From positions 89,776,001 through 89,840,000 of the forward strand of contig NC_043000.1 in NCBI RefSeq assembly GCF_006345805.1: a DNA stretch of 64,000 nucleotides, read 5' to 3'. This DNA is from Octopus sinensis. Its lineage: Eukaryota. The translations under genes and the position numbers were made by a program. Shown piece by piece: positions 13,170 to 61,445 of the stretch. The notes below the pieces were generated by a model that did no database searches, was not told where the DNA came from, and saw only the letters and a program-made list of their open reading frames with translations. Numbering within the stretch: position 1 is the stretch's first letter; each line of letters opens with the position of its first letter.

Positions 13170-15266
13170 ACGTATTACTCCAAACGTTCTAATTGGGCTA
13201 GCGTTCTAACTTGGCCCTTGGCATTACCTTACACGTACCTTATCTTTTGTTCATGTATTTGTGTTGTTCACTGCCCATCAAATAATTCGCAAAGAGTGCA
13301 AAGAAACGGAAGTATCTTGACGAATATATTCGATTTGCAGTCGTGTCCCTTCAAATGGGTGACAGAGAAGTCCTCTAGTGTGTGATAAGTTACAAAACTT
13401 TGAGCAATTATGGAATGCGACCCTCACGCTTGGAACGCTACTTGTGGACAACACATCTTGCTCTTGCAGATAAGCCCAAGGCATTCTTCGAAAAAAAAGG
13501 ATATTCCTTGAAGCAAGCTAAGTTGGACGGTAGTAGGGCATTTCGGCAACAAACTTCAATGATTGTTGAGCCTTCCAATGAGATCGCCATGTTGATTGCA
13601 AAGAGCAAGAAAAGCCATGACATCGGAAAGTCTCTCATAAAACCAAGTCGTCCACTCCGTGCAGCAGAACTCGTTCTGGGAAAAGGTAATGCAAACAAGC
13701 TTTCCTAGATTTCATTATCAAACGATACAGTCAAAGGAAGGATCGACGACTTGTTTCAAGTCATCAAATATCAAATTTTCGACTAAGTAAGAGGTTCTCC
13801 TGTTTTTGCCACCCAGTGTGATGAAACGACTGACATCGCTCAATGTTCTCAGCTACTGGTATATGTCAAGCAACTGTGTAAGACGAAATGTTGCTCTATC
13901 ACCCTATGGATAGCTGTATAACAGCAATAGCTATAGGGATTTGCTAGTAGGGGTGTACATTGATGGAGCTCCAGCCATGCTTGGTCTGCAGTCTGGATTC
14001 ATTACTAGGATAAAAGAAAAAAATCCATCTGTTGCAGGTACACACTGCATACTTCATCATGAAGCATCAGCATCCAGAATCTTACCTACGGAAATGAGAA
14101 ATGTCCTGAACGTGGCTATCAAGGTTGTCAACTTTCTTAAAGGTGGAGCCTTAAACAGTCGTCTTTTCAAATTGTTGTGTAAGGAAATGGAATCTGAACA
14201 TGAAGCATTGCTTTTTCATACGAACGTACACTGGTCAAAGGGGAACATGCTTGGACGGTTTTATGAACTACGAGAAGAAGTAGCAATATTTCTTGATTTG
14301 CTGCAGAAGGCAGATCTCCATGACAAGTTCCAGTCTGCAGGCTTTCAACAATCTCTAGCTTACCTGGTAGACATCTTCGAAGCGTTGAATGCTCTCGACC
14401 TTAAACTACAAGGGGAAAACATCAACATTCTCACGCACCACGACACCATCGAAACTTCATGGCCAAACTTGACCTCTGGAAATGTCGAATTCAGCAGGGA
14501 AATACAGTCAGTTTTAGTTACTTGGATTCTGCTCTCATTCACGGTAACCTTGATTCTGCATTAAAGAAACAAATAATCACTCATTTGACTTGAAAGCAGA
14601 ATTCATCAGATACTTCCCAGATATAGATGAAAAGCGTGGAACTTAGAAATTCATCAGGAACCCATTTCGATGTGAAGTGACTGATGTTTTGGATGAAGTG
14701 CAAGAGGAGTTCCTTGAGCTGAAGTTCAACTCCCCAGCTAAAGAAGACTTCAAAGAACTGGATCTTGAAACATTCTGGATCAAGTAAATTCCTCTTTACC
14801 CTCTGATCTCACATCAGGCAAGTTTAGCTATGTTTGGATCCACATATCTTTGTGAAACTGCATTTTCCATGCTCGTTGCTATCAAGACCAAGTACAGAAA
14901 CAGACTGAACGTTGAAAGGGCTTACCTTGTGTACTCTCCGACATTCAACCACCCATTCAAGATCTTGCAGCTAAGAAGCAGTGTCAAGTATCTCATTAAT
15001 AATGGGACTAATTCATATTCAATAAGAAAAAAACTTTTTTTATTAAGAAGCCGTGTCAAGTGTCTCATTTTTTTAATAATGTGATTATATATAAAATTAC
15101 ATATATTTTGTATAACGTGACTAATTCATATTCAATAAAAAGACTAAAAACATATTTTACATTTTATTTCAAATCTGGGAGGGAATTCTATTCATGGATG
15201 CAAGAGGAGCGTGAAGAGGACAAATTCCTAGAGGAGGCGTAGTACTAAAAAGATTAAGAACCATTG
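13170..15266 (+). mobile_element. Buster-family hAT transposon with disrupted transposase (ZBED5/SCAND3-like)
   Basis: Peptides MRPSRLERYL, QCDETTDIAQ, DGAPAM, THCILHHEA, FGSTYLCETAFS with stops and frameshifts; right TIR TTAAGAACCATTG. Confidence 0.9.
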
Positions 15267-15284
15267 GACTAAATTTATTCAATA

Positions 15285-15985
15285 GAATTGCCATTGTCTT
15301 CAACCACGGCCTCCAGACGACTTCGGAATCTCCTGCAACTCTTCTGGGCGGTCTCCTTGTTTAAGTCGGTGAATGCTACCATAATCTTTGCCTTCAGTTC
15401 ATCTTTGGTGTTACTAGGAGTTTTGTTGTTCTTTCTCTCAACTGCGCCCCATACATAATAATCAAGGTGGTTGCAGTCTGGGGAGTTAGCTTGTCAGCTA
15501 TTAGGGGTGATGTGGTCGCAGAAATTGTCTGACAACCATGATTGGGTTCTCCTGCTTGTGTGGCATGGTGCAGAATCCTGTTGCCAGACATAGAGTCTTC
15601 CAACAGTCACCCTCTTCATCCGAGGCAGTACTACCTCCTCCAGGCACTTGATGTAGACCTCCTTGTTGAGTGTGAGGCGGCGTGGGAAGATGAATGAAGG
15701 CATAATGTTGCTATCACTAGTGATCACTACAAACACCATGATGTTGACTGGATGTTCAATTTTTATCCTTCTCGGAACATGTCCTCAGATTGACACCCAA
15801 ACAGTGAAAAGTTTGAATTGGAGCTCCCTGTACGAATGCCCAGCAGTGCAGCATGTCGTTTCCAAATTTCTGGCAAAGTGAATTGCATCCGGGTGCAGTT
15901 TTTCTCACAGACGGTGTCCTAACCTAATCAACACCACAGAGGGATCGACGTAAACTCAAATAATAAACCGCGATAGGTGAACCAC
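15285..15985 (-). mobile_element. maT/DD37D-type mariner transposase fragment
   Basis: ORF 15494-15739 VWQQDSAPCHTSRRTQSWLSDNFCDH; same family as 44373-45251. Confidence 0.85.
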
Positions 15986-35989: not shown

Positions 35990-36089
35990 NNNNNNNNNNN
36001 NNNNNNNNNNNNNNNNNNNNNNNNNNNNNNNNNNNNNNNNNNNNNNNNNNNNNNNNNNNNNNNNNNNNNNNNNNNNNNNNNNNNNNNNN
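35990..36089. other. Assembly gap (100 N)
   Basis: Run of N. Confidence 1.
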
Positions 36090-36404: not shown

Positions 36405-37068
36405 GTTTCTTTATTAGCCACACACGGCTGAACACAGAGGGGACAAATTACAAAGTAGAGCTTTTCTTTTTGGAGAGAAAAATAAGAAAAGAAAACGAAA
36501 AAATAAAAAGCGGGATATGTTTTTGATCAAAAGAGATCTGAAAAAAACGATCAATAGAGATCGTGTATCACAAAAATGTTATGATGTAAAGTGTAAAGGG
36601 GGAAGCAGATACGGTTTATCTGTGGAAAGAAAAGCCTACGGAAAAAAACCACGTTAACCTCGGTCAATAATGTCATATGTTAACACATTTATTTGCAAGT
36701 AAGTAACTCTCTGTTTTACATTTTTCCGGTTTCATAGGGTTATGCCCAAGGTGGCTTCGTTATTCATAGGTGCCATCCTTGCAACATCACCCATCCTTTT
36801 TTGAAACATTCGCTAGACAAAACTTGCCTCTCTACTCTCACTTTCCTTTTCCAGTGATACTTGAAGAAGTTGTTGAGAGATTGACCAGAGAGGAAAGTGT
36901 TTGTCTCTAATCCTTTCAGATGCGTCCACCAGATACATTCTTTCGCAACAGCCACAAGGATGATGAAAATAGCTCTTCCTTCCCGTTTGAAGGAAGGAGG
37001 CGTGACGATATTGACGATAGACTCGGCTGATAAACCGACTCGTCCTACACGTGACAGCAGTCGTTTAT
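36405..37068 (-). mobile_element. Tx1/L1-like LINE 3' fragment
   Basis: Aligns to 59086-59880; 3' end runs into (TATC)n. Confidence 0.85.
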
Positions 37069-37304
37069 GTACATACTAAGCCATACATATACATATACAT
37101 GTACATAGCTTAGTATAAATAGATATATCTATACTAAGCAATGCGGTTCCACACACACACAAACACTCGCACGCTCTCACACACACACACACACATATCG
37201 TGTATCAATTTCAGTTCAACAGTTGTGGCCATGCTGTGGTGCGCACCGCCATTGTCTTTGTTACATTTTCACTACTTGGATCCATGTCTGATATGTTGCT
37301 TTTC

Positions 37305-37545
37305 GTGAATGAGGGAGTTTTATATTACTGCCCTTGACTGCGTTTCCTGCGATGTAGGTTCATCTGGAACATTTGACAGGAGGATATCCAGTTTTGTCTT
37401 CAGGGCACCTACATCTACTCCATCCACGTCTTTCATGCTTATTGGGATGATGTTGAAGGGTTGTGTGTTCTTGAAGCTCTAGCTGATGCTATCTGGTCCT
37501 GTTGAAATATTTGGCACTAAGCAACGTCACCCTTTTCAGTGTGAT
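37305..37545 (-). mobile_element. CR1/L2-type LINE 3' fragment
   Basis: Manual peptide GVDVGALKTKLDILLSNVPDEPT, typical of a CR1-group RT C-terminus. Confidence 0.6.
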
Positions 37546-37597
37546 GAATAAATTTAACTGCAAAAAAGAAAGAGGATGAAACATAAGCTGCAATAAT

Positions 37598-38187
37598 TCA
37601 TCCTTTCTATTATAGGCACAAGGCCTGATATTTGGGGGAAGGGGGTCAGTCGATTACATCGACCCCAGTGCGTAACTGGTACTTATTTCATAGACCCCGA
37701 AAGGATGAAAGGCAAAGTCGACCTCGGGAAGATTTGAACTCAGAACGTAGCGGCAGACGAAATACCTATTTCTTTACTACCCACAAGGGGCTAAACACAG
37801 AGAGGACAAACAAGGACAGACAAACGGATTAAGTCGATTAGATCGACCTCAGTGCGTAACTGGTACTTAATTTAATCGACCCCGAAAGGATGAAAGGTAA
37901 AGTCGACCTCAGCGGAATGTGAACTCAGAACGTAGTGGCAGACGAAATACCTATTTCTTTACTACCCACAAGGGGCTAAACAGAGAGGGGGAGAACAAGG
38001 ACAGACAATCGGATTAAGTCGATTATATCGACCCCAGTGCGTAACTGGTACTTATTTAATCGATCCCGAAAGGTTGAAAGGCAAAGTCGACCTCGGCGGA
38101 ATTTGAACTCAGAACGTAGCAGCAGACGAAATACCGCAAAGCATTTTTACCCGGCGTGCTTAACGAGTCAGCCGGCTCGCCGCCTTA
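37598..38187 (-). mobile_element. SINE family 1 trimer with LINE-derived tails (~185-bp period)
   Basis: One head, three bodies, two CTCTGTGTTTAGCCCCTTGTGGGTAGTAAAGAAATAG tails. Confidence 0.85.
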
Positions 38188-39032
38188 GCAAAGAGCAAAG
38201 CAAACTGAAAGAGGCTTTTTTATACGAATATTATTTAGTATTAAAGAATCAGGAAGAAAACACACATTTATGTGTAGGAAAAAAGCAATGAAATTTTTGA
38301 ATGGCTTGCAGTTGAAGAGATAATTCATACATGCAACGCTAGCGAAGTCGACATTCAAATGAAAGGTTTACCTAAGTGCGCGCATGCGCATAAACTGTAG
38401 TCCGGTCATGAACACTTTCCACTCAGGCCGAAGATAAGTATATATATATATATTATTACTTTTTTTTTATTGCGCATGCATAAAATGAACATAATATCGG
38501 GAATCTTAGTGAAAAGAACTGATGTCGCTGTTATAGACATTCTATGTACTTGGCTGGTAGTGGGACCTCCCATGGGAAAGTAGAACACATCTACTTTCTT
38601 GATGGCTTGTTGCCAACTCAATGTGGCAGTCCCATGAAAGAGAATCTTTCTAATTTACTTTCTTGCCCCCTGTATGAAAAGGGGATTCCCCTCCAATTGT
38701 TGGTGATCCCCAGCAGATAGCCACTCATTGATTTTTTTTTAAGTTAAAACAAGGGTGAGACGCCTCATTTTTGGTTAATTGAGCAAGTAGAAATAACAGC
38801 CAAATCACCCTCAAATATAGTCTTATGTCTTTAAAAAAATCCTAGATGGTCACGGCGGAAATATTTTTGACTATTGGTCATCTAGATTAGGCATATCCTT
38901 GGGTTGACCAAGAGCAACTTAAGCCAAGTTTGATTTTCTTTATTAGTCAAAGAATTAGGAAATCTGTTGGCAGACAACTCCAGATAAGAATGCGAGGAGA
39001 ACTTTCTGGCCTGCAAGGTTATACGATCTGAA

Positions 39033-39064
<32 letters not shown>

Positions 39065-39069
39065 ATATA

Positions 39070-39165
39070 TACTAAGCAATAAGGGTTCAGCAACGAATTG
39101 CCTTACCACATAACACATTCGGTATGTGGTAAGGCAATTCGTTGCTGAACCCTTATTGCTTAGTA
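39070..39165. repeat. Perfect 43-bp inverted repeat with 10-nt loop at the array boundary
   Basis: 39070-39112 is the exact reverse complement of 39123-39165. Confidence 0.95.
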
Positions 39166-39472
39166 TTACTTAAATTTTCCTCAAATGAGGCTTTTACATG
39201 CCGAAGACTACTTGGTGTAATTGATAATTATTCCAAATTAATTTCACCCTTCATTATTACGGATAACCATATTTTATCTCAGTAGATGACTACAGCATCT
39301 TGTTTTGGCTACACGCGGTGGGAAGGGGCTGTTGACACAATCGTTTCATTCACAAATTTGAATTCGGTGATACTAGTTGAGGATTCTAGCTCGCTCTGAT
39401 ACTGAGTTGAGTTGGGGGGGGGGTTCCTAGTATCTCAAAATTCAATATATAATCATTTATGATTATAGTATT

Positions 39473-39577
39473 CCACGCTGAAGAGAAAAGAAGTTTCGGT
39501 AAGATAGAATTATTTAATATTTAATATTTTAATTCTTATGCTTTCCTAAAACTTGATTTCGAAACGTACGTCCGTGG
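39473..39577 (+). ncRNA. Type I hammerhead ribozyme, copy 1; predicted cleavage after C39572
   Basis: CCACG-CTGAAGA-[GAAA..TTTC long helix II]-GAA-ACGTACGT-C-CGTGG; all core nucleotides canonical. Confidence 0.85.
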
Positions 39578-40066
39578 TAACTTTAAAAATGTTTGATAGA
39601 TTGCGGTTAATTCATTCTCTCTTACCTGTTTGTGTCAGCCTTCCAATTGCTGTTTTTACTGAGATCTCCCTTTTAGTAGAAGAAATAGCTATACCTTTGA
39701 CTGCTATTTCTAATTTCGGTATGTGGTAGGCAATTCGTTGCTGAACCCTTATTGCTTAGTATTACTTAAATTTTCCTCAAATGAGGTTTTACATGCCGAA
39801 GACTACTTGGTGTAATTGATAATTATTCCAAATTAATTAATTTCACCCTTCATTATTACGGATAACCATATTTTATCTCAGTAGATGACTACAGCATCTT
39901 GTTTTGGCTACACGCGGGTGGGAAGGGGCTGTTGACACAATCGTTTCATTCACAAATTTGAATTCGGTGATACTAGTTGAGGATTCTAGCTCGCTCTGAT
40001 ACTGAGTTGAGTTGGTACCTCCTAGTATCTCAAAATTCAATATATAATCATTTATGATTATAGTAT

Positions 40067-40171
40067 TCCACGCTGAAGAGAAAGAAGTTTCGGTAAGATA
40101 GAAGTATTTAATATTTATATTTTAATTCGTATGCTTTCCTAAAACTTGATTTCGAAACGTACGTCCGTGGA
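40067..40171 (+). ncRNA. Type I hammerhead ribozyme, copy 2; predicted cleavage after C40165
   Basis: TCCACG-CTGAAGA..GAAACGTACGTC-CGTGGA. Confidence 0.85.
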
Positions 40172-40657
40172 TACTTAAAATGTTGATAAGAATTTTGCGG
40201 TTAATTCATTCTCTCTTACCTGTTTGTGTCGCCTTCCATTGCTGTTTTACTGAGATCTCCTTTTAGTAGAAGAATAGCTATAACCTTTGACTGCTATTTC
40301 TAAATTTCGGTATGTGGTAAGGCAATTCGTTGCTGAACCCTTATTGCTTAGTATTACTTAAATTTTCCTCAAATGAGGCTTTTACATGCCGAAGACTACT
40401 TGGTGTAATTGATAATTATTCCAAATTATTAATTTCACCCTTCATTATTACGGATAACCATATTTTATCTCATAGATGACTACAGCATCTTGTTTTGGCT
40501 ACACGCGGGTGGGAAGGGGCTGTTGACACAATCGTTTCATTCACAAATTTGAATTCGGTGATACTAGTTGAGGATTCTAGCTCGCTCTGATACTGAGTTG
40601 AGTTGGTACCTCCTAGTATCTCAAAATTCAATATATAATCATTTATGATTATAGTAT

Positions 40658-40766
40658 TCCACGCTGAAGAGAAAAGAAGTTTCGTAAGATAGAAGTATTT
40701 ATATTTAAATAATATTTTAATTCTTATGCTTTCCTAAAACTTGATTTCGAAACGTACGTCCGTGGA
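40658..40766 (+). ncRNA. Type I hammerhead ribozyme, copy 3; predicted cleavage after C40760
   Basis: TCCACG-CTGAAGA..GAAACGTACGTC-CGTGGA. Confidence 0.85.
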
Positions 40767-41056
40767 TAACTTTAAAAATGTTTGATAGATTGAGGTTAAT
40801 TCATTCTCCTTACCTGTTTGTGTCAGCCTTCCAATTGCTGTTTTAACTGAGATCTCTCCCTTTTTAGTAGAAGAAATAGCTATAACCCTTGACTGCTATT
40901 TCAAATTTCGGTATGTGGTAAGGCAATTCGTTGCTGAACCCTTATTGCTTAGTATTACTTAAATTTTCCTCAAATGAGGCTTTTACATGCCGAAGACTAC
41001 TTGGTGTAATTGATAATTATTCCAAATTAATTAATTTCACCCTTCATTATTACGGA

Positions 41057-41102
<46 letters not shown>

Positions 41103-41112
41103 AGAGAGAGAG

Positions 41113-41145
<33 letters not shown>

Positions 41146-41149
41146 AGAG

Positions 41150-41545
41150 AGATATTCCTTTCTACTATAGGCACAAGCCCTGAGATTTTGGGGCGGGGGT
41201 AAGTCGATTACATCGACACCAGTACTCAAATGGTACTTATTTTATCGACCCCAGAAAGGATGAAAGGCAAAATCGGCCTCAGCGGAATTTGAATTCAGAA
41301 CGTAAAGACAGACGACATGCCGCTAAGCATTTTGCCCTACATGCTAACCACTCTGCCGGTTCACCCCCTTATAAATATTGGTTTCAAATTTTAGTACAAG
41401 GCCAGCAGTTTCGGGGAGGGGTAAGTCGACCCCAATGATTAAATGGTATTTATTTTCTCGACCCAAAAAGGATGAAAAGTAAAGTCGACCTCAGCGGAAT
41501 TTGAACTCAAAACGTAAAAATCGGGCAAAATGCCGCTAAGCATTC
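41150..41545 (-). mobile_element. Two SINE family 1 copies
   Basis: Family body motifs repeated twice. Confidence 0.8.
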
Positions 41546-41884
41546 ATTAATCATTTCCCTCACACTCATTACATTTCGGTAAATAAAACCAAAGAGAATT
41601 TTGTGCATTATTCAAAACTTCAGTGTCAATCTTTTCACATTGGACTCGTGTTTTCTTTCAATTTTTCAAAACTTCTCGGACTTTATACATAGACAACGGA
41701 CTTAAGATGCCCTTAAACATATATATATATATATATTCCTTCTTTTTTCCGTTTCTCGCCGATTGTTTTCCGTACAACTAGAGCAGAGAAGCCCATTGTA
41801 TGCATTCCCAGATTACAGATGCAAATTCACAGATAAAATATGTATTTTAAAAATTAATAAATAAATAAATTCATGAATAGATGT

Positions 41885-42172
41885 TGTTTTCACAGCGATA
41901 ATGTTCTTCTCAGTACATGAGTCGTTCCAGTTAACACGATTTTTTGCACTACCTGTAGGCATGGTAAGCCTGGTATCATTTTCAAATAGGTTTCAGTGCC
42001 TTTTTTTATAATTCCTAGAGATCCTACAATCACTGGTACTGTAGTCGCCATGAGATGCCACATTTTTTCAATTTCTATTAGCAAGTCTTTATATTTACTG
42101 ATCTTGTCAAATTCTTTCGCCGCTATATTGTGATCGCAAGGAATACTCATGTCAATTAATAAGCACACCTTT
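41885..42172 (-). mobile_element. R4/Dong-like LINE 3' end (restriction-like endonuclease)
   Basis: ORF 41890-42168 CLLIDMSIP..KISKYKDL..VPVIVGSLG..HVLRRTL. Confidence 0.85.
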
Positions 42173-42199
42173 TTTTGTCTGATCTTTTATATTATTATT

Positions 42200-42598
42200 A
42201 TTATTCTATGTTTGACTTTTGCTTTACATTTGTACAAGTTGGCTCCAAGTCTCGCCCAGAGACCTCAAGAGACAACAAGTTGGAAGTTCATGTTGGTGTT
42301 ATGCCTAGGGTGCCATATATTACTAGTGAATGTTTAAGAAACCATAAGAAAATTATGTTTGTTTTAAAACTTGAGATTACATAGAAAGTATTTTGCTAGG
42401 ATATGAGCAGTTCCTATGAGCACTATCTTTTGAATTTCTGCCATTTTGGGGTTTCCTGGTATCTGAGCTAGGTAGCAATCAGCCCCTTTTGCTATCATTC
42501 CCAGAGCAGCTATGACAACAGGTATAGTTTTAGTCTTCTCAGGTTCCACATTTTGCTAATTTCTATTTCAAGATCTTTATATTTGCTCAGTTTTATTA
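42200..42598 (-). mobile_element. Second Dong-like family, 5'-truncated, within (ATT)n
   Basis: ORF TIPVVIAALG..GTAHIL plus a 3' UTR shared with 58281-58480. Confidence 0.8.
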
Positions 42599-42622
42599 TT
42601 ATTATTGTTATTATTATTATTA

Positions 42623-42678
<56 letters not shown>

Positions 42679-43138
42679 TAATATTTTTTTTTAATAAATC
42701 ATTTCTAGCTTCGTTTTTAAAAAGGAAATTGTTCTCGATATCTTAGAATTCAGTAATTAGCTGTAATTTTTATATTCGATATTCACAATGTCCGCTGACT
42801 TTCGACTTTAATGTATATACCACATGTTCAATAAAAGTTATAAATCTCATGTACCGAAAGCTCATGTACCGAAAGCTCATGTACCGAAATGCATTAAATT
42901 TAATGTCATGGAAGCAGAGATTATTCTGCCTATGTTAAGTCCCATTAAAACGAGAGGAGTGTGCGCATGCTTGTGTAATATTGCGTGTCTGTTGTGTGTC
43001 TAAGGATTAAACAAAATTTATGAAACGTTTGTATTTCGTGTGAGTGTGAGTAAATGCATTGTGTGAATGTGTAAATGTAAAGGCATAAATGAGTGCGTGT
43101 ATGTGTGTGTGTAATGTGGTGGTATGTATGTATTTATG

Positions 43139-43174
<36 letters not shown>

Positions 43175-43240
43175 TGACAGATAGGTTGAACATACACACA
43201 TGTGTGTATGTGTGTGAGGGGTGTGTATGTTTGTATGTAT

Positions 43241-43299
<59 letters not shown>

Positions 43300-43369
43300 T
43301 GGTTGAACATACACACACGTGTGTATGTGTGTGAGGCGTATATATATGTGTGTGTATGCGTGGATGCGA

Positions 43370-43560
43370 GTGGGTTAGTTGTTAGGATGTTGCACTCATG
43401 ATTGTTGAGATTGTGGTTTCAATTCTTGGACTGGGCAATGCATTGTGTTCTTGAGCAAAAAATTTCATTTCACGTTGCTCCAGTTCACTCAGCTAGCAAA
43501 AATGAGTAACCCTGAAACAGACTGGCATACCCCATGGCGGTCGGTGTTAGAGATATTTAT
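43370..43560 (+). mobile_element. SINE family 3
   Basis: tRNA-like head and TTGTGTTCTTGAGCAA..GCTCCAGTTCACTCAGC. Confidence 0.75.
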
Positions 43561-44372: not shown

Positions 44373-45251
44373 CAGGTAAATTGCTGCCATTTGATACTTT
44401 TAATTTCGCGCATGCGCATTGTTTCTTTTTTATTTTGACGACTACACAGTATATAGTAGGCTCAATTGGGCACCATCTGTGAGAAAAACAGTACCATGAC
44501 GCAATTCACTCAGCCAGAAATTTGGAAACGACATGCTGTACTACTAGGCATTCGCGCCGGAACCTCCAATGTGAACATTTCAAAGTTTTGGGTGTCAATC
44601 TGAGAACAATGCTATCTGGAGACATGTACCGAGAGTGATAATGATCAAACATCCAATGAACATCATGGTATTTGGATTGATCACTAGTGATGGTGACATT
44701 ATGCCTCCATTCATCTTCTCACACGGCCTCAGACTCAACACGGAGGCTACATCAAGTGCCTGGAGGAAGTAGTACTGCCCTGGATCAAGCGGGTGACTGC
44801 TAGAAGACTCTATGTCTGGCAACAGGACTCTGCACCATGCCACGCATGCAGGAGGACCCAGTCATGGCTATCAGACAATTTCTGTGACCACATCATCTCT
44901 AACATCTGGCCTGCTGACTCTCCAGACTGCGAACCCCTTGATTATTATGTGTGAGACGTAATTGAGCGAGAGACCAACAAAACTCCTTGTAACACTAAAG
45001 ATGAAGTGAAGACAAGGATAATGGCAGCATTCACCAACTTAAACAAGGAGACCGTCCAGAAGAGTTGCAGGAGAATCCGAAGTCGTCTGAAGGCCGTGAT
45101 TGAAGCCAATTGCGATTTTATTGAATAAATTTACTCTTCAGTATTTCAAGATATTTTTATGTAATTTTGGTAAATACATCTGCTAAAATGAGATGTCAGT
45201 GTTATTTTTATTTTTGGGTAATTTGGATGACAGTTTATTCACCGCACCCTG
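44373..45251 (+). mobile_element. maT/DD37D mariner, internally deleted, both ends present
   Basis: WQQDSAPCH..SPDCEPLDY motif; right end CACCGCACCCTG|TA, eroded left end TA|CAGGTAAATTG. Confidence 0.85.
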
Positions 45252-49401: not shown

Positions 49402-49995
49402 TAAGACGGCGAGCTGGCAAAACGTTAGCACGCTGGGCGAAATGCGTAGCCGTATTTCGTCTGCCGCTACGTTCTGAGTTCAAATTCCGCCGAGGTCGAC
49501 TTTGCTTTTCATCCTTTCGGGGTCGATAAATTAAGTACCAGTTACGCACTGAGGTCGATATAATCGACTTAATCCGTCTGTTCTTCTTTGTCTCCTCTGT
49601 GTTTAGCCCCTTATGGGTAGTAAAGAAATAGTTATTTCGTCTGCCGCTACGTTCTGAGTTCAAATTCCGCCGGGGTCGACTTTGCCTTTCATCCTTTCGA
49701 GGTCGATTAAATAAGTACCAGTTAAGCACAGGGGTCGATATAATCGATTTAATCCGTTTGTCTGTCTTTGTTTGTCCTCTCTGTGTTTAGCCCCTTGTGG
49801 GTAGTAAAGAAATAGGTACTTCCTCTGCCGTTACATTTTGAGTTAAAATTCCGCCGAGGTCGACTTTGCCATTCATCCTTTCAGGGTCGATAAATTAAGT
49901 ACCAGTTACGCACTGGGATAGGTGTAATCGACTTAATCCCTTTGTCAGTCCTTGTTTGTCCCCTCTGTGTTTAGCCCCTTGTGGGCAATAATTTT
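49402..49995 (+). mobile_element. SINE family 1 trimer with LINE-derived tails (~180-184-bp period)
   Basis: One head then three body+tail units. Confidence 0.88.
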
Positions 49996-51372: not shown

Positions 51373-52962
51373 CAGGGGTCGCCAAAGGAGATCCGAGGGA
51401 TCCCCTAAGAGTCGGCGAGGAATTACAGGGGTTCGATGATAGCCAAGGAGTCGAATGGGGTTCAGCGTGCAAAAGACCAGCTCGCCCAGATGAACTGCTT
51501 CAAATACTTAGCGCCATGAAACGTGGGAATACATAAATTTTCACGGCAGCGAGAAGTCTGTTCTTACTAACGTTCGAAGCCTTATGCCGTAATCTGTATC
51601 GTACCGTAAGTCCTTGAGTATAGTCCGCCCTTGAGTATAATACGCAGGGGATTTTTAGGGGGCTGTACTTCTGAAAAACCTAAACCTTGTGTATAATACG
51701 CACCCCTTCTCTAACTTGAGTCGTACGTAATTGAGCCAGCAGCACCTAGTCAAACAAACACTTCCGCGCATGCGTAATACAATAATGGTGATGTTCTTAA
51801 CTGTTATATGGGAATGTAAATATGTTTGCAAATTGTTTTTGTTACATGTTATTCTGTGATCTGAATACGTTTATTTTAATAAATGTTACTTACTGTAAGT
51901 TATGGATGATTCTTTTACGACTTCATTGCTTTCAGGCTTAGCTTAAGGTATTTTCGCGCCCGAAATCACAAAATGCGTCTGAATAAACATTGCCGGACAG
52001 CAAATAGGGACTCGGACATTGCTTAAAAAATATTTTTCATTTTTAACCTCGTATATAGTACGCACCAGGGATTTTGACCTTTAAATTTTGGGGGAAATGT
52101 GGATTATACTCGAGGATTTACAGTAATCGAAGATTCAGAGGTGTGATTGAAGGGATGTGGACTGTCGAGTGTTTGCTTATGGAAATTACTATGCCTGCTA
52201 AGGGAGATAAGATATTAAATACATATCCCATAAACGTTTTTATTAGTAAGTCATTGTTGGTGTAGGATTTGTGACGCTGGAATGGTGATGACTTGAACGC
52301 TACGCCGTCCTTCGTGCTGTGGTTGTCTCTCTATTACAAAGTGCCTGATTTCAGTGTCGATACTGCGGCGAAAACCTTTCTGAGATCAGACGTCGGAGTG
52401 ACTATTGGTGCAATACGAAAACAAGTGAAAGGTACCCACACCTTAAAGCGGCAGCTGAGCTTCTGGCATTTCCCAGCTCTCACATAGTGGAAGTTGGCTT
52501 CAGCCATGCAAATGCAATCCTCAGCAAACAGAGAAATCACCTGAACCTGGAGGAACGAGACGATTTGAGACTGAAACTGGCCTACATCCAGCTTGATATT
52601 AATGCCTTGATTCAGGATCATCATGCTAATCCTTCACATTAATGTTGTCAATTTCAGTAAAAGATATTCCTGCAACATGATGCGTTTTTCACATTTTCTA
52701 AGCGTGAAGACAATGTCATAAAAATTGAAAGTTTAATACTGTATACTCATACACGTAGTTTCAAATGTAAAAGTGTGTCATCTTCAATAGAATTTCTAAA
52801 TTTGTCGTACATGTATATTTTAGGTAACATTTTAATTGCGAGCATCCGTACCCAATACGCATTTAAGACATGGTACGGTAAGGTAGGGTATTAGGATGGT
52901 CGTCGATGCGGAAGGAGAAGTGATAAAGAGGGTCGATGATCGAAAAAGTTTGGTGACCCCTG
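51373..52962 (+). mobile_element. Non-autonomous Buster-type hAT element with 8-bp TSD
   Basis: TIRs CAGGGGTCGCCAA / TTGGTGACCCCTG; TSD AACTAATA on both sides; transposase C-terminus FPSSHIVEVGFS..DLRLKL at about 52430-52640. Confidence 0.92.
51604..52123. mobile_element. pogo/Tc1-type MITE nested in the hAT element
   Basis: TA|CCGTAAGTCCTTGAGTATA ... TATACTCGAGGATTTACAG|TA. Confidence 0.8.
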
Positions 52963-57608: not shown

Positions 57609-58045
57609 TAGTTTTAGTTTTATTTTTATAGCGTGCTTTCACTTCACTACCGAGCGCAGCTCTGTGTGCCTTGGGTATGTGCTGTGATTTGTTGTGATGC
57701 TCTGATGGTTATTGTATGGAAAGTGTTCTGCGTAGGATGTGTGCAGTGCCTAGTAGTGCAATTTTCTGTATGTTATATGTGTTTGTAAGTCCTGGTGTTT
57801 TTGTTATGTATTTGTCTGAATATTTTTTTATCATGCCTAATGCACCTACTATGATAGGAATTGTTTCTGTTTTCAGATTCCACATTCTAGTTACCTCTAT
57901 TTCCAGGTCTTTGTATTTTGAGAGTTTCTCCATTTCTTTTAGAGACACGTTGTCATCTGCCGGTACTGATACATCAATTAGAAAGCATTTTTTTCTTCAT
58001 GGTCTCTGACAACTATATCTGGTCTGTTGGCCTTAATTTCTCTAT
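57606..58045 (-). mobile_element. Dong/R4-like LINE 3' end within (ATT)n
   Basis: ORF 57709-57948 EKLSKYKDLEIEVTRMW..IPIIVGALG..GTAHILRRTL; (ATT)n on both sides. Confidence 0.88.
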
Positions 58046-59085: not shown

Positions 59086-61047
59086 GTTTCTTTATTGGCC
59101 ACACAGGGCTGCACACAGATGGGACAAGTTACAAGGTAGAGCTTTTCTTTTGGGGGATGAAGAGAACAAAAAACAAAAGAAAAAAAAAAGGGGTGGCGTA
59201 GGTTTTCGATCAAGAGGGATCGTAAACGGGAAGAAAAGAACAAAAAAAATTTGAATAAAATAAAAGGAATAAAAAGAAAAAAAAGAAAAGGAAAAGGAAC
59301 AAAAGGAAAGAGAAATGAAAAAAGAAGAAAAAAGGGGAAAAAGGGGGAAGAGGAAAAAAACGATCAATAGGGATCGTGTATCACAGTGTTATGATATATG
59401 GTGTAAAGGGGAAAGCAAGTAAGGTTTATCCGTGGGAAGAAAAGCCTACGAAAAAGACCACGGTAACCTTGGTCAATATTGTTATATGTTACCACATTTG
59501 TTTCCAAGTGGGTAACCCTCTGTTTTCAATTTCTGGGTTCATAGGATTATGCTCAAGGTGGCTTCGTCATTCATACGTGCCATCCTTGCTACATTCACCC
59601 ATCTTTTTTTAAAACATTCGCTAGACAAAACTTGCCTCTCTACTCTCACTTTCCTTTTCAAGTGGTACTTGAAGAAGTTGATGAGAGATTGACCAGAGAG
59701 GAAAGTGTTTGTCTCCAATCCTTTCAGACGCGTCCACCAGATACATTCTTTCGCCATAGCCACAAGGATGATGAAAATAGCTCTTCCTTCCCGTTTGAAG
59801 GAAGGAGGCGTGACAATATTGACGATAGACTCAGCTGACAAACCGACTCGTCCCACACGTGACAGCAGTTGTTCGACATAAGCCACAGGTCGGAAATTGT
59901 TGGACACTGCACGAGTGCGTGCAGAACGGTTTCGTCGCTCTGACCGCATCTCGGGCAGGTCGGCCCCGTGTTTCTCGAGCCGTGTCTGTAGAGCTTATCC
60001 CGAACGGGTAGCGCTTCTCGGTAGCACTGCCAGGCCAGGGATCTCTGGAAGTTGTCCATGGGCCCTGGCCCGAAAGTCGTCCTGAACAGGCGGGTCAGGT
60101 ACTCCTCGTCGACGTCCAGGTTCGCCCCGAGCTCGTCGTCGTACCTCCCCTCCACTAATCCCCTATAGAATGCTTTGGTTGTGTTGAAGTCACTCAAGGT
60201 CGACCCGGGACGGCAGAGTTGCTTGAGAGCAACGCGACACTCGCGGTGCCAATCGCCCTTCCTCGGCCTCTTTTTGATCCACGACTGCAGTTCGGTCATG
60301 GAGACGAGCTGCGGGAAAGCGTGCCTCACAAACGGCGACCACACCTGTTCACCGTCGTCTACATAGAGCCAGAGATGTCGCAGTCTCAGCGCGTGTCTGC
60401 GCATCATCAACCACGGCATGCCCAGCCCTCCTTTTAACGGGTGTTGACAGCAAATGGATCGTCTGACCATCGGGACGCATCCTTTCCACAAGAAGCGAAA
60501 GAGAATGCATTCTAGTTTGGTGATGGTAGGGTCGGGACAAGGTACGACGGTCAGGCGGTAGTAGATGACGGACGCGATGTACGTGTTCGCCACCTCCGCC
60601 CGACCTTTTAGGGACAGTTTCCTCTCGGCCATTGCCGGGCGAGAGTGACCACCCTACTCGTTATCTCGTTCCAGTTCTTCTCCACTTGGAGGTCCGGACC
60701 AAACCAGACCCCGAACAACTCAACCGGGCCGTCGGTCCAGCGTCCCACGACGGAGGCGCTGGTGGACGGCATGGGCTTGCTTCTCCAGGTGCCTAGTCGC
60801 AAGCCCACTGACTTTTCCGGTTGATTTTCGCTCCTGTCACCGCTTCGTAGTTTTTCAGTGTCTCGCCGACCTGCTCGATGTGCTCGTGGCTAGACACTAT
60901 GACGGTGACGTCGTCCGCGTATGCAGACACGCTCGTCCCGCATCCCAGTTCTCGCGAGATGCCCCTCAAAGTTGCCAGCTTCCGCAATAATGGCTCGAGA
61001 GTCAATACGTATAGAAGCGACGAGAGGGGGCATCCCTGACGGACCGA
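59086..61047 (-). mobile_element. 5'-truncated Tx1/L1-clade LINE (RT, thumb, CCHC finger, 3' UTR), frameshifted
   Basis: RQGCPLS, SAYADDVTV, GGLGMP, WQCYREALPV, CPRCGQSDETVLHALVQCP; 5' end at (GATA)n. Confidence 0.93.
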
Positions 61048-61048
61048 A

Positions 61049-61133
<85 letters not shown>

Positions 61134-61149
61134 GAGTGAGAGAGAGAGG

Positions 61150-61445
61150 GATATGTTAACCTCATAAAGGGATGGTTACATCCAACGGAATGCTGGTTCG
61201 ATATCTAGTATTATTGGGGAATGAAATTCCCTTAAAACTATTGGTATATATTAAGCATATAGTTCATATCCAGTTAAATGAAGGAAAGAAAATAGAGAGT
61301 AGAAAGTTAATAATTATTTATTAATTACAAATTGGTAGTCTTTACTTCTTACAGCCGTTTCCATTAATACTCAAGAATTTATTTACAAATTTGTGCATTA
61401 AATTTGCATTAATATGCTGTGAGCATAATTTCATCAGAGAAAAAA
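61150..61445 (-). mobile_element. Repeat family E
   Basis: Aligns to 11240-11535. Confidence 0.8.
61345..61442 (-). ncRNA. Type I hammerhead with long helix II and intact catalytic core
   Basis: TTTCT-CTGATGA-[~69 nt]-GAA-ACGGCTGT-A-AGAAG; base of helix II has an A-G mismatch in this copy. Confidence 0.7.

What the first reader, a model, noticed from the sequence alone, without database searches (positions are those of the whole stretch)
39070..41060. Retrozyme-like tandem array: one intact hammerhead per ~595-bp unit, predicting a self-processing (circular) RNA
Seen: 3.25 near-identical non-coding units, each with CCACG-CUGAAGA-helix II-GAA-ACGUACGU-C-CGUGG; predicted cleavage sites at 39572, 40165 and 40760 are 593 and 595 nt apart. 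Known: tandem units carrying type I hammerheads with a palindromic helix III define metazoan non-LTR retrozymes, newt satellite 2 and PLE pseudo-LTRs; multimeric transcripts self-cleave to monomers that can circularise. Inferred: an octopus non-autonomous ribozyme retroelement producing a ~595-nt RNA and borrowing PLE reverse transcriptase. I know of no description of this family but cannot check. Caveat: unit differences are mostly small indels, so copy number may be distorted by long-read error.
Basis: partly seen in the sequence, partly recalled or inferred. Interest (0 to 1): 0.93.

Follow-up and report, generated by a model that had tools for sequence, protein, structure and literature searches.

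The report
Hammerhead-ribozyme tandem repeat (octopod retrozyme)
A roughly 2-kb stretch holds 3.25 head-to-tail copies of a 599-bp non-coding unit, each with one complete hammerhead self-cleaving RNA motif; it looks like a cephalopod example of the already known animal "retrozyme" elements, so it is a sound but fairly ordinary find.

Summary
Window 39118-41060 holds 3.25 head-to-tail copies of a ~599-bp non-coding unit. Each full repeat carries a type I hammerhead on the + strand, and cleavage is predicted after C39572, C40165 and C40760.

- **Motif.** All core positions match the hammerhead consensus. Helix I has 5-6 bp. Helix III is a 2-bp stem within the 8-nt palindrome ACGUACGU. Helix II is unusually long at 74-78 nt.
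- **Chance.** A strict descriptor finds only these three sites in 64 kb, against 0.017 expected.
- **Rfam.** Hammerhead_1 aligns over its full length as the best family for each copy, but scores only 18.8-21.8 bits against a gathering score of 34.
- **Folding.** Two copies are predicted to pair into a double hammerhead. The + strand monomer is far more structured than shuffles (z about -5.2 and -5.5) and than its complement (z -2.4).
- **Insertion site.** The insert sits inside a (TA)n microsatellite and starts with a 44-nt perfect foldback, features reminiscent of Penelope-like element (PLE) insertions.

My best reading is a non-LTR retrozyme-type element of an octopod genome. Self-cleavage, circular RNA, mobilisation and copy number are untested, and no relatives could be retrieved. 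I rate it a new member of a known kind, of moderate interest.

The parts
39033..39071 (.). Left flank: (AT)n microsatellite, the presumed target site
   Evidence: TRF row 39033-39071; sequence
39069..39112 (-). 44-nt inverted copy of unit coordinates about 152-195. It forms a perfect foldback with 39123-39166 across a 10-nt spacer (39113-39122), of which ACACA (39113-39117) matches nothing in the unit.
   Evidence: the repeat finder I1-I3, 100% complementary; blastn minus-strand hit at 100% over 44 nt
39118..39572 (+). 5'-truncated first unit, from unit coordinate about 147 to the first cleavage site
   Evidence: blastn q141-595 matches 39118-39572 at 95.5%; alignment A1
39472..39578 (+). Hammerhead copy 1: helix I CCACG/CGUGG (5 bp), CUGAAGA, 76-nt helix II, GAA, ACGUACGU, C17 = 39572
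   Evidence: Descriptor hit; Rfam RF00163 positions 1-45/45, 18.8 bits; MFE shows helix I and helix II
39573..40165 (+). Full unit 1, cleavage site to cleavage site, 593 nt
   Evidence: fold z-score -5.5
40067..40171 (+). Hammerhead copy 2: helix I 6 bp, 74-nt helix II, C17 = 40165
   Evidence: Descriptor hit; Rfam RF00163 positions 1-45/45, 21.8 bits. The MFE of the isolated motif is an alternative fold.
40166..40760 (+). Full unit 2, cleavage site to cleavage site, 595 nt
   Evidence: fold z-score -5.2, and the MFE contains helix I and helix II of the hammerhead
40658..40766 (+). Hammerhead copy 3: helix I 6 bp, 78-nt helix II, C17 = 40760
   Evidence: Descriptor hit; Rfam RF00163 positions 1-45/45, 21.4 bits; MFE shows helix I and helix II
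40761..41060 (+). 3' partial unit (unit coordinates 1-300). Its end at ...TTACGGATAAC is the presumed start point of reverse transcription.
   Evidence: blastn q1-298; alignment A1 shows homology ending at 41060
41061..41103 (.). Right flank: (TA)n microsatellite, followed by (AG)n at 41103-41152
   Evidence: TRF rows; sequence

Best explanation
This is one insertion of a non-autonomous, non-coding retroelement of the animal non-LTR retrozyme type, in an octopod genome. The proposed mechanism follows, with each step marked as shown or inferred.

1. **Transcription (inferred).** The + strand of such a tandem array is transcribed into a multimeric RNA.
2. **Hammerhead folding (shown computationally only).** Each unit folds into a type I hammerhead. 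The monomer has only a 2-bp helix III capped by GUAC. Because ACGUACGU is a perfect palindrome, two neighbouring ribozymes pair into a double hammerhead with an 8-bp helix III.
3. **Cleavage (inferred).** The RNA is cut 3' of the GUC at C17, giving monomers of about 593-599 nt.
[quoted passage not shown] The result is a highly self-paired circular RNA.
5. **Reverse transcription (inferred).** A reverse transcriptase/endonuclease of an autonomous PLE nicks AT-rich or (TA)n DNA. It then copies either the circle (rolling-circle) or an uncleaved multimer by target-primed reverse transcription.
6. **The product (shown).** The result is a head-to-tail, 5'-truncated 3.25-mer lying inside a (TA)n tract.
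7. **The left-end foldback (inferred).** I read the 44-nt foldback as a snap-back or template switch of the cDNA at the end of synthesis.
For: - **Motif.** All core positions are consensus in all three copies: C3 U4 G5 A6 G8 A9, G10.1-C11.1, G12 A13 A14, A15.1-U16.1 and C17.
- **Chance.** Only 0.017 strict descriptor hits are expected per 64 kb.
- **Rfam.** Hammerhead_1 is the best-scoring family for each motif. It aligns over the full model, and the only large departure is a 70-74-nt insertion in stem II.
- **Folding.** MFE folds of copies 1 and 3 give helix I plus helix II. Cofolding two motifs gives the trans ACGUACGU helix III at -53.4 kcal/mol, against -41.0 for the two monomers.
- **Strand asymmetry.** The + strand monomers fold with z = -5.2 and -5.5, while the complement gives z = -2.4 and about 36 kcal/mol less stability.
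- **Composition and coding.** There is no ORF over 58 aa and GC is 34%.
- **Insertion context.** Both flanks are (TA)n, yet such tracts cover only 5% of the window.
- **Literature on PLE insertions.** They are partial tandems, often with an inverted copy at the 5' end, and are biased to microsatellites, (TA)n for Naiads (10.1101/2021.04.23.441226). A purified PLE protein cleaves AT-rich DNA and extends both strands (PMC11167929).
- **Literature on retrozymes and hosts.** Retrozymes are described as tandem type I hammerhead repeats in many phyla, including molluscs, with PLEs as the likely mobilisers (PMC7229834; 10.64898/2026.07.22.740005). Octopus genomes hold PLE families.
Against: - All three copies fall below Rfam's gathering score (18.8-21.8 against 34 bits) and are invisible in normal scans.
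- The 74-78-nt helix II is atypical, and there is no evidence for the loop 1/loop 2 tertiary contacts that make natural hammerheads fast.
- The isolated copy 2 prefers an alternative fold.
- Only one locus is seen. No relative could be retrieved from any collection, so family status, mobility, covariation and expression are all unverified.
- The inverted piece (unit coordinates 152-195) does not share the 3' end of the direct array (coordinate 300). It is therefore not the canonical inverted 5'-truncated PLE copy.
- Landing in (TA)n has about a 5% chance expectation, which is suggestive only.
- No PLE open reading frame lies in the window.
Confidence: 0.75

Rival explanations
1. This is an ordinary local tandem duplication or satellite whose hammerhead-like motif is a chance match or a dead relic. 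There would be no self-cleavage, no circular RNA and no retrotransposition.
For: - All copies score below Rfam's gathering score.
- The long helix II is unlike canonical animal hammerheads, which have a 4-bp helix II (PMC4209133).
- Only one locus was seen, and no homologues were found elsewhere.
- A multi-gigabase genome would contain hundreds of chance strict-descriptor hits at 0.017 per 64 kb.
Against: - The chance of such a motif inside one given 599-bp unit is about 1.6e-4.
- The perfect 8-nt palindromic helix III, the full-length alignment to the Rfam model, the strand-specific excess of RNA structure and the (TA)n/foldback insertion signature are all unexplained by chance.
Confidence: 0.1
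2. This is not an independent retrozyme family. It would be an internally deleted or heavily truncated partial tandem of an autonomous PLE, in effect an array of its pseudo-LTR/UTR region. The hammerhead would play the still unclear role it has in PLEs rather than producing circular RNA.
For: - PLE pseudo-LTRs carry type I or minimal hammerheads that act as dimers (PMC4209133).
- PLE insertions are tandem or inverted and favour microsatellites.
- For the anole PLE, hammerhead cleavage was not needed for insertion in vitro, and no transcripts ending at the cleavage site were seen.
- Retrozymes are phylogenetically nested among pseudo-LTRs.
Against: - The unit is only 599 bp and has no trace of an RT or GIY-YIG reading frame.
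- Full units repeat head to tail with nothing between them.
- No PLE ORF lies in the window.
- This rival differs from the best explanation mostly in name and in whether a circular RNA is made.
Confidence: 0.1
3. The copy number, the foldback, or both are artefacts of a noisy long-read assembly. The true locus would hold a different number of units, possibly one.
For: - Differences between units are dominated by 1-nt homopolymer indels: 29 indel events against 6 substitutions.
- The window contains a 100-N scaffold gap at 35990-36089.
- Complex PLE-type insertions are known to cause assembly problems.
Against: - Assemblers usually collapse tandem repeats rather than expand them.
- The units differ from each other at several places, including a G10 run present only in the first unit, so distinct copies were read.
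- The motif itself does not depend on copy number.
Confidence: 0.05

Closest known systems
Metazoan non-LTR retrozymes (coral, mussel, axolotl; Cervera & de la Pena 2020, PMC7229834), including newt satellite 2
   Same: [quoted passage not shown]
- One type I hammerhead per unit, on one strand only.
- No LTR and no ORF, with low GC.
- A short helix III capped by a palindromic tetraloop, implying action as a dimer.
- A highly self-paired monomer RNA in which the hammerhead can still form.
- Small arrays are typical: 75% of families have at most 7 units.
   Different: - The 599-bp unit is above the 170-400 nt of the 2020 paper, though inside the 51-972 bp range of the 2026 preprint.
- Helix II is 74-78 nt instead of about 4 bp plus a loop, so the motif misses the Rfam threshold.
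- No expression, circularity or copy-number data exist for this element.
- I found no cephalopod example in the searchable literature.
Pseudo-LTR hammerheads and insertion architecture of Penelope-like elements (Cervera & de la Pena 2014, PMC4209133; Craig et al. 2021; Frangieh et al. 2024, PMC11167929)
   Same: - Hammerheads that need dimerisation.
- Partial tandem insertions that are 5'-truncated.
- An inverted segment at the 5' end.
- A preference for AT-rich or microsatellite targets.
   Different: - There is no RT/GIY-YIG ORF.
- The hammerhead has a proper 2-bp helix III rather than the minimal motif.
- The inverted piece is only 44 nt long and does not share the 3' terminus of the direct copies.
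- No recognisable 30-40-bp tail can be defined from a single locus.
Plant LTR retrozymes (PMC4918200)
   Same: Non-autonomous elements whose hammerhead-processed RNA circularises and whose circular RNA is of similar size (600-1000 nt).
   Different: The plant elements have type III hammerheads inside LTRs, a PBS and PPT, 4-bp target-site duplications, and are mobilised by Gypsy elements. None of this is present here.
Rfam RF00163 Hammerhead_1
   Same: The alignment covers the full model (1-45/45) with every core position and the ACG..CGU helix III matched.
   Different: The score is 18.8-21.8 bits against a gathering score of 34, because 70-74 nt are inserted where the model expects about 10 nt in stem II.

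Membership tests
Hammerhead ribozyme, type I | Conserved catalytic core: C3 U4 G5 A6 N7 G8 A9, G12 A13 A14, the A15.1-U16.1 pair and H17 | tested here: met
   All positions are consensus in all three copies; N7 = A and H17 = C within a GUC triplet.
Hammerhead ribozyme, type I | A three-helix junction with helix I open and helices II and III closed | tested here: met
   Helix I is 5-6 bp and formed by distal strands. Helix II is a closed imperfect hairpin of 74-78 nt that starts with G10.1-C11.1. Helix III is AC/GU capped by GUAC. MFE folds of copies 1 and 3 show helices I and II; copy 2 prefers an alternative fold.
Hammerhead ribozyme, type I | Score at or above the curated Rfam gathering score for RF00163 (34 bits) | tested here: not met
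   There is no hit at gathering score or at E<=10 on 2.4 kb. Scanned alone, the motifs score 18.8, 21.8 and 21.4 bits. The deficit sits in the 70-74-nt stem II insertion.
Hammerhead ribozyme, type I | Site-specific self-cleavage 3' of H17 | not testable with these tools
   This needs in vitro transcription of monomer and dimer constructs with core mutants as controls.
Dimeric (double) hammerhead of the newt, PLE and retrozyme kind | A short helix III with a palindromic stem-loop, so that two motifs form one extended helix III | tested here: met
   ACGUACGU is a perfect palindrome with a duplex energy of -9.8 kcal/mol. The cofold MFE of two motifs contains the 8-bp trans helix, at -53.4 against -41.0 kcal/mol.
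Metazoan non-LTR retrozyme | Tandem head-to-tail repeats of tens to hundreds of bp, each with one type I hammerhead | tested here: met
   There are 3.25 units of about 599 bp with three hammerheads 593 and 595 nt apart. This is within the reported 51-972 bp range.
Metazoan non-LTR retrozyme | Non-coding, no LTR/PBS/PPT, GC below 50% | tested here: met
   The longest ORF is 58 aa. GC is 34-35%. There are no terminal direct repeats other than the units themselves.
Metazoan non-LTR retrozyme | A monomer RNA that is highly self-paired | tested here: met
   The z-scores are -5.2 and -5.5 on the + strand against -2.4 on the complement. In the circular fold, 63-66% of bases are paired.
Metazoan non-LTR retrozyme | Expressed as linear and circular monomeric RNA | not testable with these tools
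   No transcriptome data are reachable. A protein-space search with the longest consensus frame, which would also have reached gene calls from public read assemblies, found nothing.
Metazoan non-LTR retrozyme | A dispersed multi-copy family, as evidence of mobility | not testable with these tools
   Only one locus lies in the 64 kb. No eukaryotic genome collection can be searched by DNA. Pattern scans of metagenome and prokaryote collections gave only one chance bacterial locus.
Metazoan non-LTR retrozyme | Co-existence with autonomous PLEs in the host genome | not tested
   No PLE ORF lies in the window. The literature reports Penelope-like and Naiad families in Octopus species.
PLE-mediated insertion | A partial tandem with an inverted copy at the 5' end, inserted in an AT-rich or microsatellite target | tested here: inconclusive
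   The tandem and the (TA)n flanks are present, and (TA)n covers 5% of the window. The inverted piece is only 44 nt long and ends 105 nt short of the direct 3' terminus, so it is a foldback rather than the canonical inverted truncated copy. A target-site duplication cannot be read inside a microsatellite.

The most novel reading that the evidence does not exclude
Two readings are not excluded by my evidence.

1. The hammerhead could be a distinct structural subclass. About 70 nt are inserted beyond a 4-bp helix II, so an internal loop sits exactly where loop 2 normally contacts helix I. Such ribozymes would be missed systematically by Rfam-based surveys, and animal retrozymes would then be under-counted.
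2. The element could be mobilised by a (TA)n-targeting PLE such as a Naiad. That clade is present in Octopus species and itself lacks hammerheads. This would show that ribozyme-bearing parasites are not tied to ribozyme-bearing PLE clades.
Probability: 0.15. Interest if true: 0.55.

Novelty: new member of a known kind. Interest (0 to 1): 0.35.

Why it matters
If confirmed, this adds cephalopods to the animals that encode hammerhead-processed circular RNAs. It also gives a clean, apparently young insertion with both junctions readable: a (TA)n target, a 3' end 300 nt after the cleavage site, and a 5' foldback. That could inform the poorly understood integration step of retrozymes and Penelope-like elements.

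It also shows that a hammerhead with a long helix II escapes standard Rfam annotation.

It does not change the picture of what retrozymes are. Tandem type I hammerhead repeats are already described as widespread in metazoa, including molluscs.

Tried and rejected
- **Rfam at gathering score on the whole window and at E<=10 on 38900-41300.** No hammerhead was reported. The only notable hits were mir-299/MIR4208-type matches to the perfect foldback, which I reject as a hairpin artefact. The hammerhead appeared only when each motif was scanned alone.
- **Exact look-up of ten spurious ORF translations of the array in the 15-billion-protein collection.** None is present.
- **Homology search with the 80-aa longest frame of the consensus.** There was no candidate, so no related contigs could be fished from public assemblies.
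- **Metagenome pattern CTGANGAGAAA-N50-80-TTTCGAAACGTACGTC.** No matches.
- **Looser pattern CTGANGA-N60-90-GAAACGTACGTCCGTGG in metagenomes and prokaryote genomes.** It gave four contigs. The two I read (L002, and L004 from a Verrucomicrobiota MAG) carry the same GC-rich bacterial locus, with no helix I or II complementarity. All four matches span 97 nt. I count this as one chance event and reject it.
- **A SINE-like Pol III origin, as in Schistosoma Sm-alpha.** There is no tRNA-like sequence at 36500-43500 and no B-box match inside the array.
- **A PLE partner in the window.** Pfam scans of 20 ORF fragments found only a LINE remnant (RVT_1 and zf-RVT at 59.7-61.2 kb) and a weak hAT signal.
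- **A minus-strand ribozyme, which would point to a viroid-like or HDV-like agent.** There were no descriptor or Rfam hits on the minus strand of the array.
- **The inverted 44-mer as a canonical inverted 5'-truncated PLE copy.** Rejected, because its outer end (unit coordinate 195) does not coincide with the direct 3' end (coordinate 300).
Full report
**1. The observation**

The region was read directly. From 39118 to 41060 there are 3.24 head-to-tail copies of a unit whose majority consensus is 599 bp. The layout is:
- a 5'-truncated unit at 39118-39572;
- two full units measured between predicted cleavage sites, 39573-40165 (593 nt) and 40166-40760 (595 nt);
- a 3' partial unit at 40761-41060.

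blastn of one unit against the whole window finds the family only here. Each of the three repeats contains CCACG-CUGAAGA-(74-78 nt)-GAA-ACGUACGU-C followed by CGUGG.

**2. Is the hammerhead more than chance?**

I wrote a type I descriptor with these requirements: helix I >=5 bp, CUGANGA, helix II >=4 bp from its base and up to 120 nt long, GAA, an A15.1...U16.1 helix III of >=2 bp, H17, and the helix I partner strand.
- On both strands of the window it returns exactly the three array copies.
- In 300 dinucleotide-preserving shuffles of the window it returns 0.017 hits per 64 kb. That is about 1.6e-4 for one 599-bp unit.
- The three copies are one evolutionary event, so this is the relevant figure.

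Rfam gave nothing at gathering score and nothing at E<=10 on 2.4 kb. When each motif was scanned alone, RF00163 Hammerhead_1 was the best of 4227 families each time.
- It aligned over the whole model (1-45/45) at 18.8, 21.8 and 21.4 bits. The gathering score is 34.
- The alignments match the six core-proximal helix I columns, CUGAnGA, the base of stem II, CGAAACG..CGUC and the 3' strand of helix I.
- The one big departure is 70-74 nt where the model expects about 10 nt in stem II.

So the core is canonical and the curated threshold is failed because of a long helix II.

**3. Structure**

- **Single motifs.** Folded alone, copies 1 and 3 give helix I plus a long imperfect helix II, with the core and ACGUACGU unpaired. 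Copy 2 prefers an alternative fold.
- **Helix II.** It starts with four pairs (GAAA/UUUC), then a small internal loop, then AAGUUU/AAACUU and an AU-rich distal hairpin. The internal loop therefore sits where loop 2 lies in canonical animal hammerheads, which have a 4-bp helix II and a 6-bp helix I (PMC4209133).
- **Helix III.** As a monomer it is 2 bp capped by GUAC. ACGUACGU is a perfect palindrome with a duplex energy of -9.8 kcal/mol. Cofolding two motifs gives the classical double hammerhead with an 8-bp helix III, at -53.4 against -41.0 kcal/mol for the two separate monomers.
- **Precedent.** This matches the architecture described for newt, axolotl and other metazoan type I hammerheads, which cleave poorly as monomers and well as dimers (PMC7229834; PMC4209133; PMC3088659).

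**4. The RNA as a whole**

The cleavage-to-cleavage monomers fold with z = -5.2 and -5.5 against shuffles. The reverse complement gives only z = -2.4 and is about 36 kcal/mol less stable.
- The excess structure is therefore specific to the strand that carries the ribozyme.
- In the circular fold, 63-66% of bases are paired. In unit 2, helices I and II of the hammerhead are part of the global MFE.
- Most metazoan retrozyme circles are likewise predicted to leave the ribozyme free to form.

There is no ORF over 58 aa in the array, and the longest stop-to-stop frame of the consensus is 80 aa. GC is 34-35%. No ribozyme is detected on the minus strand, which argues against a viroid-like or HDV-like replicon.

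**5. Boundaries and insertion context**

- **3' end.** The array ends at 41060 (...TTACGGATAAC), 300 nt after the last cleavage site, and runs straight into (TA)n at 41061-41103.
- **5' end.** On the left, (AT)n at 39033-39071 abuts a 44-nt segment (39069-39112). That segment is a 100% reverse complement of 39123-39166, with a 10-nt spacer between the arms.
- **Target.** The element therefore lies inside a (TA)n tract. Such tracts make up 5% of the window, so this is suggestive rather than proof.

The literature on PLE insertions fits much of this:
- They are highly 5'-truncated partial tandems, often with an inverted 5'-truncated copy at the 5' end and a 30-40-bp tail.
- They show strong microsatellite bias, (TA)n for Naiads and possibly for Neptune (10.1101/2021.04.23.441226).
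- A purified anole PLE protein cleaves AT-rich DNA, extends both strands, and initiates reverse transcription internally on its RNA (PMC11167929).

The locus resembles this architecture in its tandem form, its target and its inverted 5' segment, but not in detail. The inverted piece covers unit coordinates 152-195, while the direct array ends at coordinate 300. It is therefore a foldback at the point where cDNA synthesis stopped (coordinate about 147), not an inverted copy sharing the 3' end. I interpret it as a snap-back or template switch; that is inference.

**6. Quality of the copies**

Against the consensus there are 6 substitutions and 29 indel events, 18 of them in homopolymer context, over 1971 nt.
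- Real divergence would be dominated by substitutions.
- This is the error profile of a long-read assembly, and the window also has a 100-N gap.
- The true copies are probably about 99.7% identical.
- That fits either a young insertion or rolling-circle copying of one template.

**7. Host and partners**

A LINE remnant lies at 59.7-61.2 kb on the minus strand, with RVT_1 and zf-RVT domains. Its nearest named homologues are in Argonauta hians and Octopus sinensis, so an octopod origin is plausible. No PLE ORF lies in the window. Published work reports Naiad PLEs in Octopus species and 31 Penelope-like families in O. vulgaris, without any mention of ribozymes.

**8. Relatives elsewhere**

None could be obtained. 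No eukaryotic DNA collection is searchable here.
- The exact look-up of the array's spurious ORFs found nothing.
- The homology search with the longest consensus frame found nothing.
- Pattern scans of metagenomes and prokaryote genomes gave nothing or one chance bacterial locus.

Covariation, family size and expression therefore remain untested.

**9. Comparison with what is known, and verdict**

The element meets every sequence-testable criterion of a metazoan non-LTR retrozyme:
- a tandem array;
- one type I hammerhead per unit;
- no coding capacity and no LTRs;
- low GC;
- a self-paired RNA;
- a dimer-type helix III.

It fits reported unit lengths of 51-972 bp and typical array sizes. It fails the Rfam gathering score because of its long helix II. 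Expression, circularity and mobility could not be tested. I found no description of a cephalopod retrozyme in the searchable literature.

I file it as a new member of a known kind, with a mildly unusual ribozyme variant and a nicely readable insertion site. Interest is 0.35. Confidence in the retrozyme-type explanation is 0.75. My rough, untested estimates for its steps are about 0.9 that the motif is a genuine hammerhead, about 0.65 that it cleaves as a dimer, and about 0.5-0.6 for circular RNA and PLE mobilisation.

Noticed in passing
window 39088-39147 (within the foldback 39069-39166): The perfect 44-bp foldback at the left edge of the array scores 44-45 bits on Rfam mir-299 on both strands (gathering score 67), and also hits MIR4208. 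This reflects a perfect hairpin, not a miRNA gene. If transcribed, it would nonetheless be a long dsRNA hairpin.
   Followed up: partly
window 59724-61155, minus strand: A LINE remnant: an RVT_1 fragment (60796-61155) and a 302-aa ORF with zf-RVT (59724-60632). The nearest named homologues are in Argonauta hians (58%) and Octopus sinensis (46%). Closer ones (73-86%) lie on short JGI/ENA metagenome contigs and on one contig labelled as a Herbaspirillum MAG, which probably means host DNA in those data sets.
   Followed up: partly
window 41893-42186 (-) and 57712-57996 (-): Two paralogous open frames share a motif (ID.S.P.D.N...KE..K.SKYKDL.IE...MW.L...T.P.IVG.LG) but have no Pfam match. One lies only about 830 bp to the right of the array. 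They are probably remnants of an unidentified transposable-element protein.
   Followed up: partly
window 15497-15784 (-) and 44697-44951 (+): Two frames share KCLEEVVLP..KRVT. Neither has a Pfam hit at E<=0.1. They are probably decayed transposase fragments.
   Followed up: partly
window 13379-15081 (+): Open frames with only a weak match to the hAT dimerisation domain (E = 0.094). This may be a decayed hAT transposon.
   Followed up: partly
window 37648-38135, 41150-41500 and 49452-49985: SINE-like units of about 185 bp occur in short tandem arrays (2.6 and 2.9 copies). The two arrays are in opposite orientations, and further copies flank the right side of the hammerhead array.
   Followed up: no
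window 35990-36089: A run of 100 N, which is a scaffold gap. Together with the indel-dominated differences between units, this indicates a scaffolded long-read assembly of limited base accuracy.
   Followed up: partly
window 52446-52524, minus strand: One further hammerhead-like match appears only under the loosest descriptor (helix I 4 bp, helix II 3 bp, helix III 1 bp). That is at chance level, with 0.15 expected per 64 kb.
   Followed up: partly
L001-L004 (JGI metagenome contigs and JBEEIB010000194.1, a Verrucomicrobiota MAG): The loose pattern CTGANGA-N60-90-GAAACGTACGTCCGTGG matched four contigs, each over 97 nt. The two I read (L002 and L004) carry the same GC-rich bacterial locus, with no helix I or II complementarity. 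This is a chance match, not a ribozyme.
   Followed up: yes
whole window: The window is extremely rich in microsatellites. (TA)n tracts alone cover about 5% of it, alongside many (AGAT)n, (TG)n and (TAT)n arrays.
   Followed up: partly
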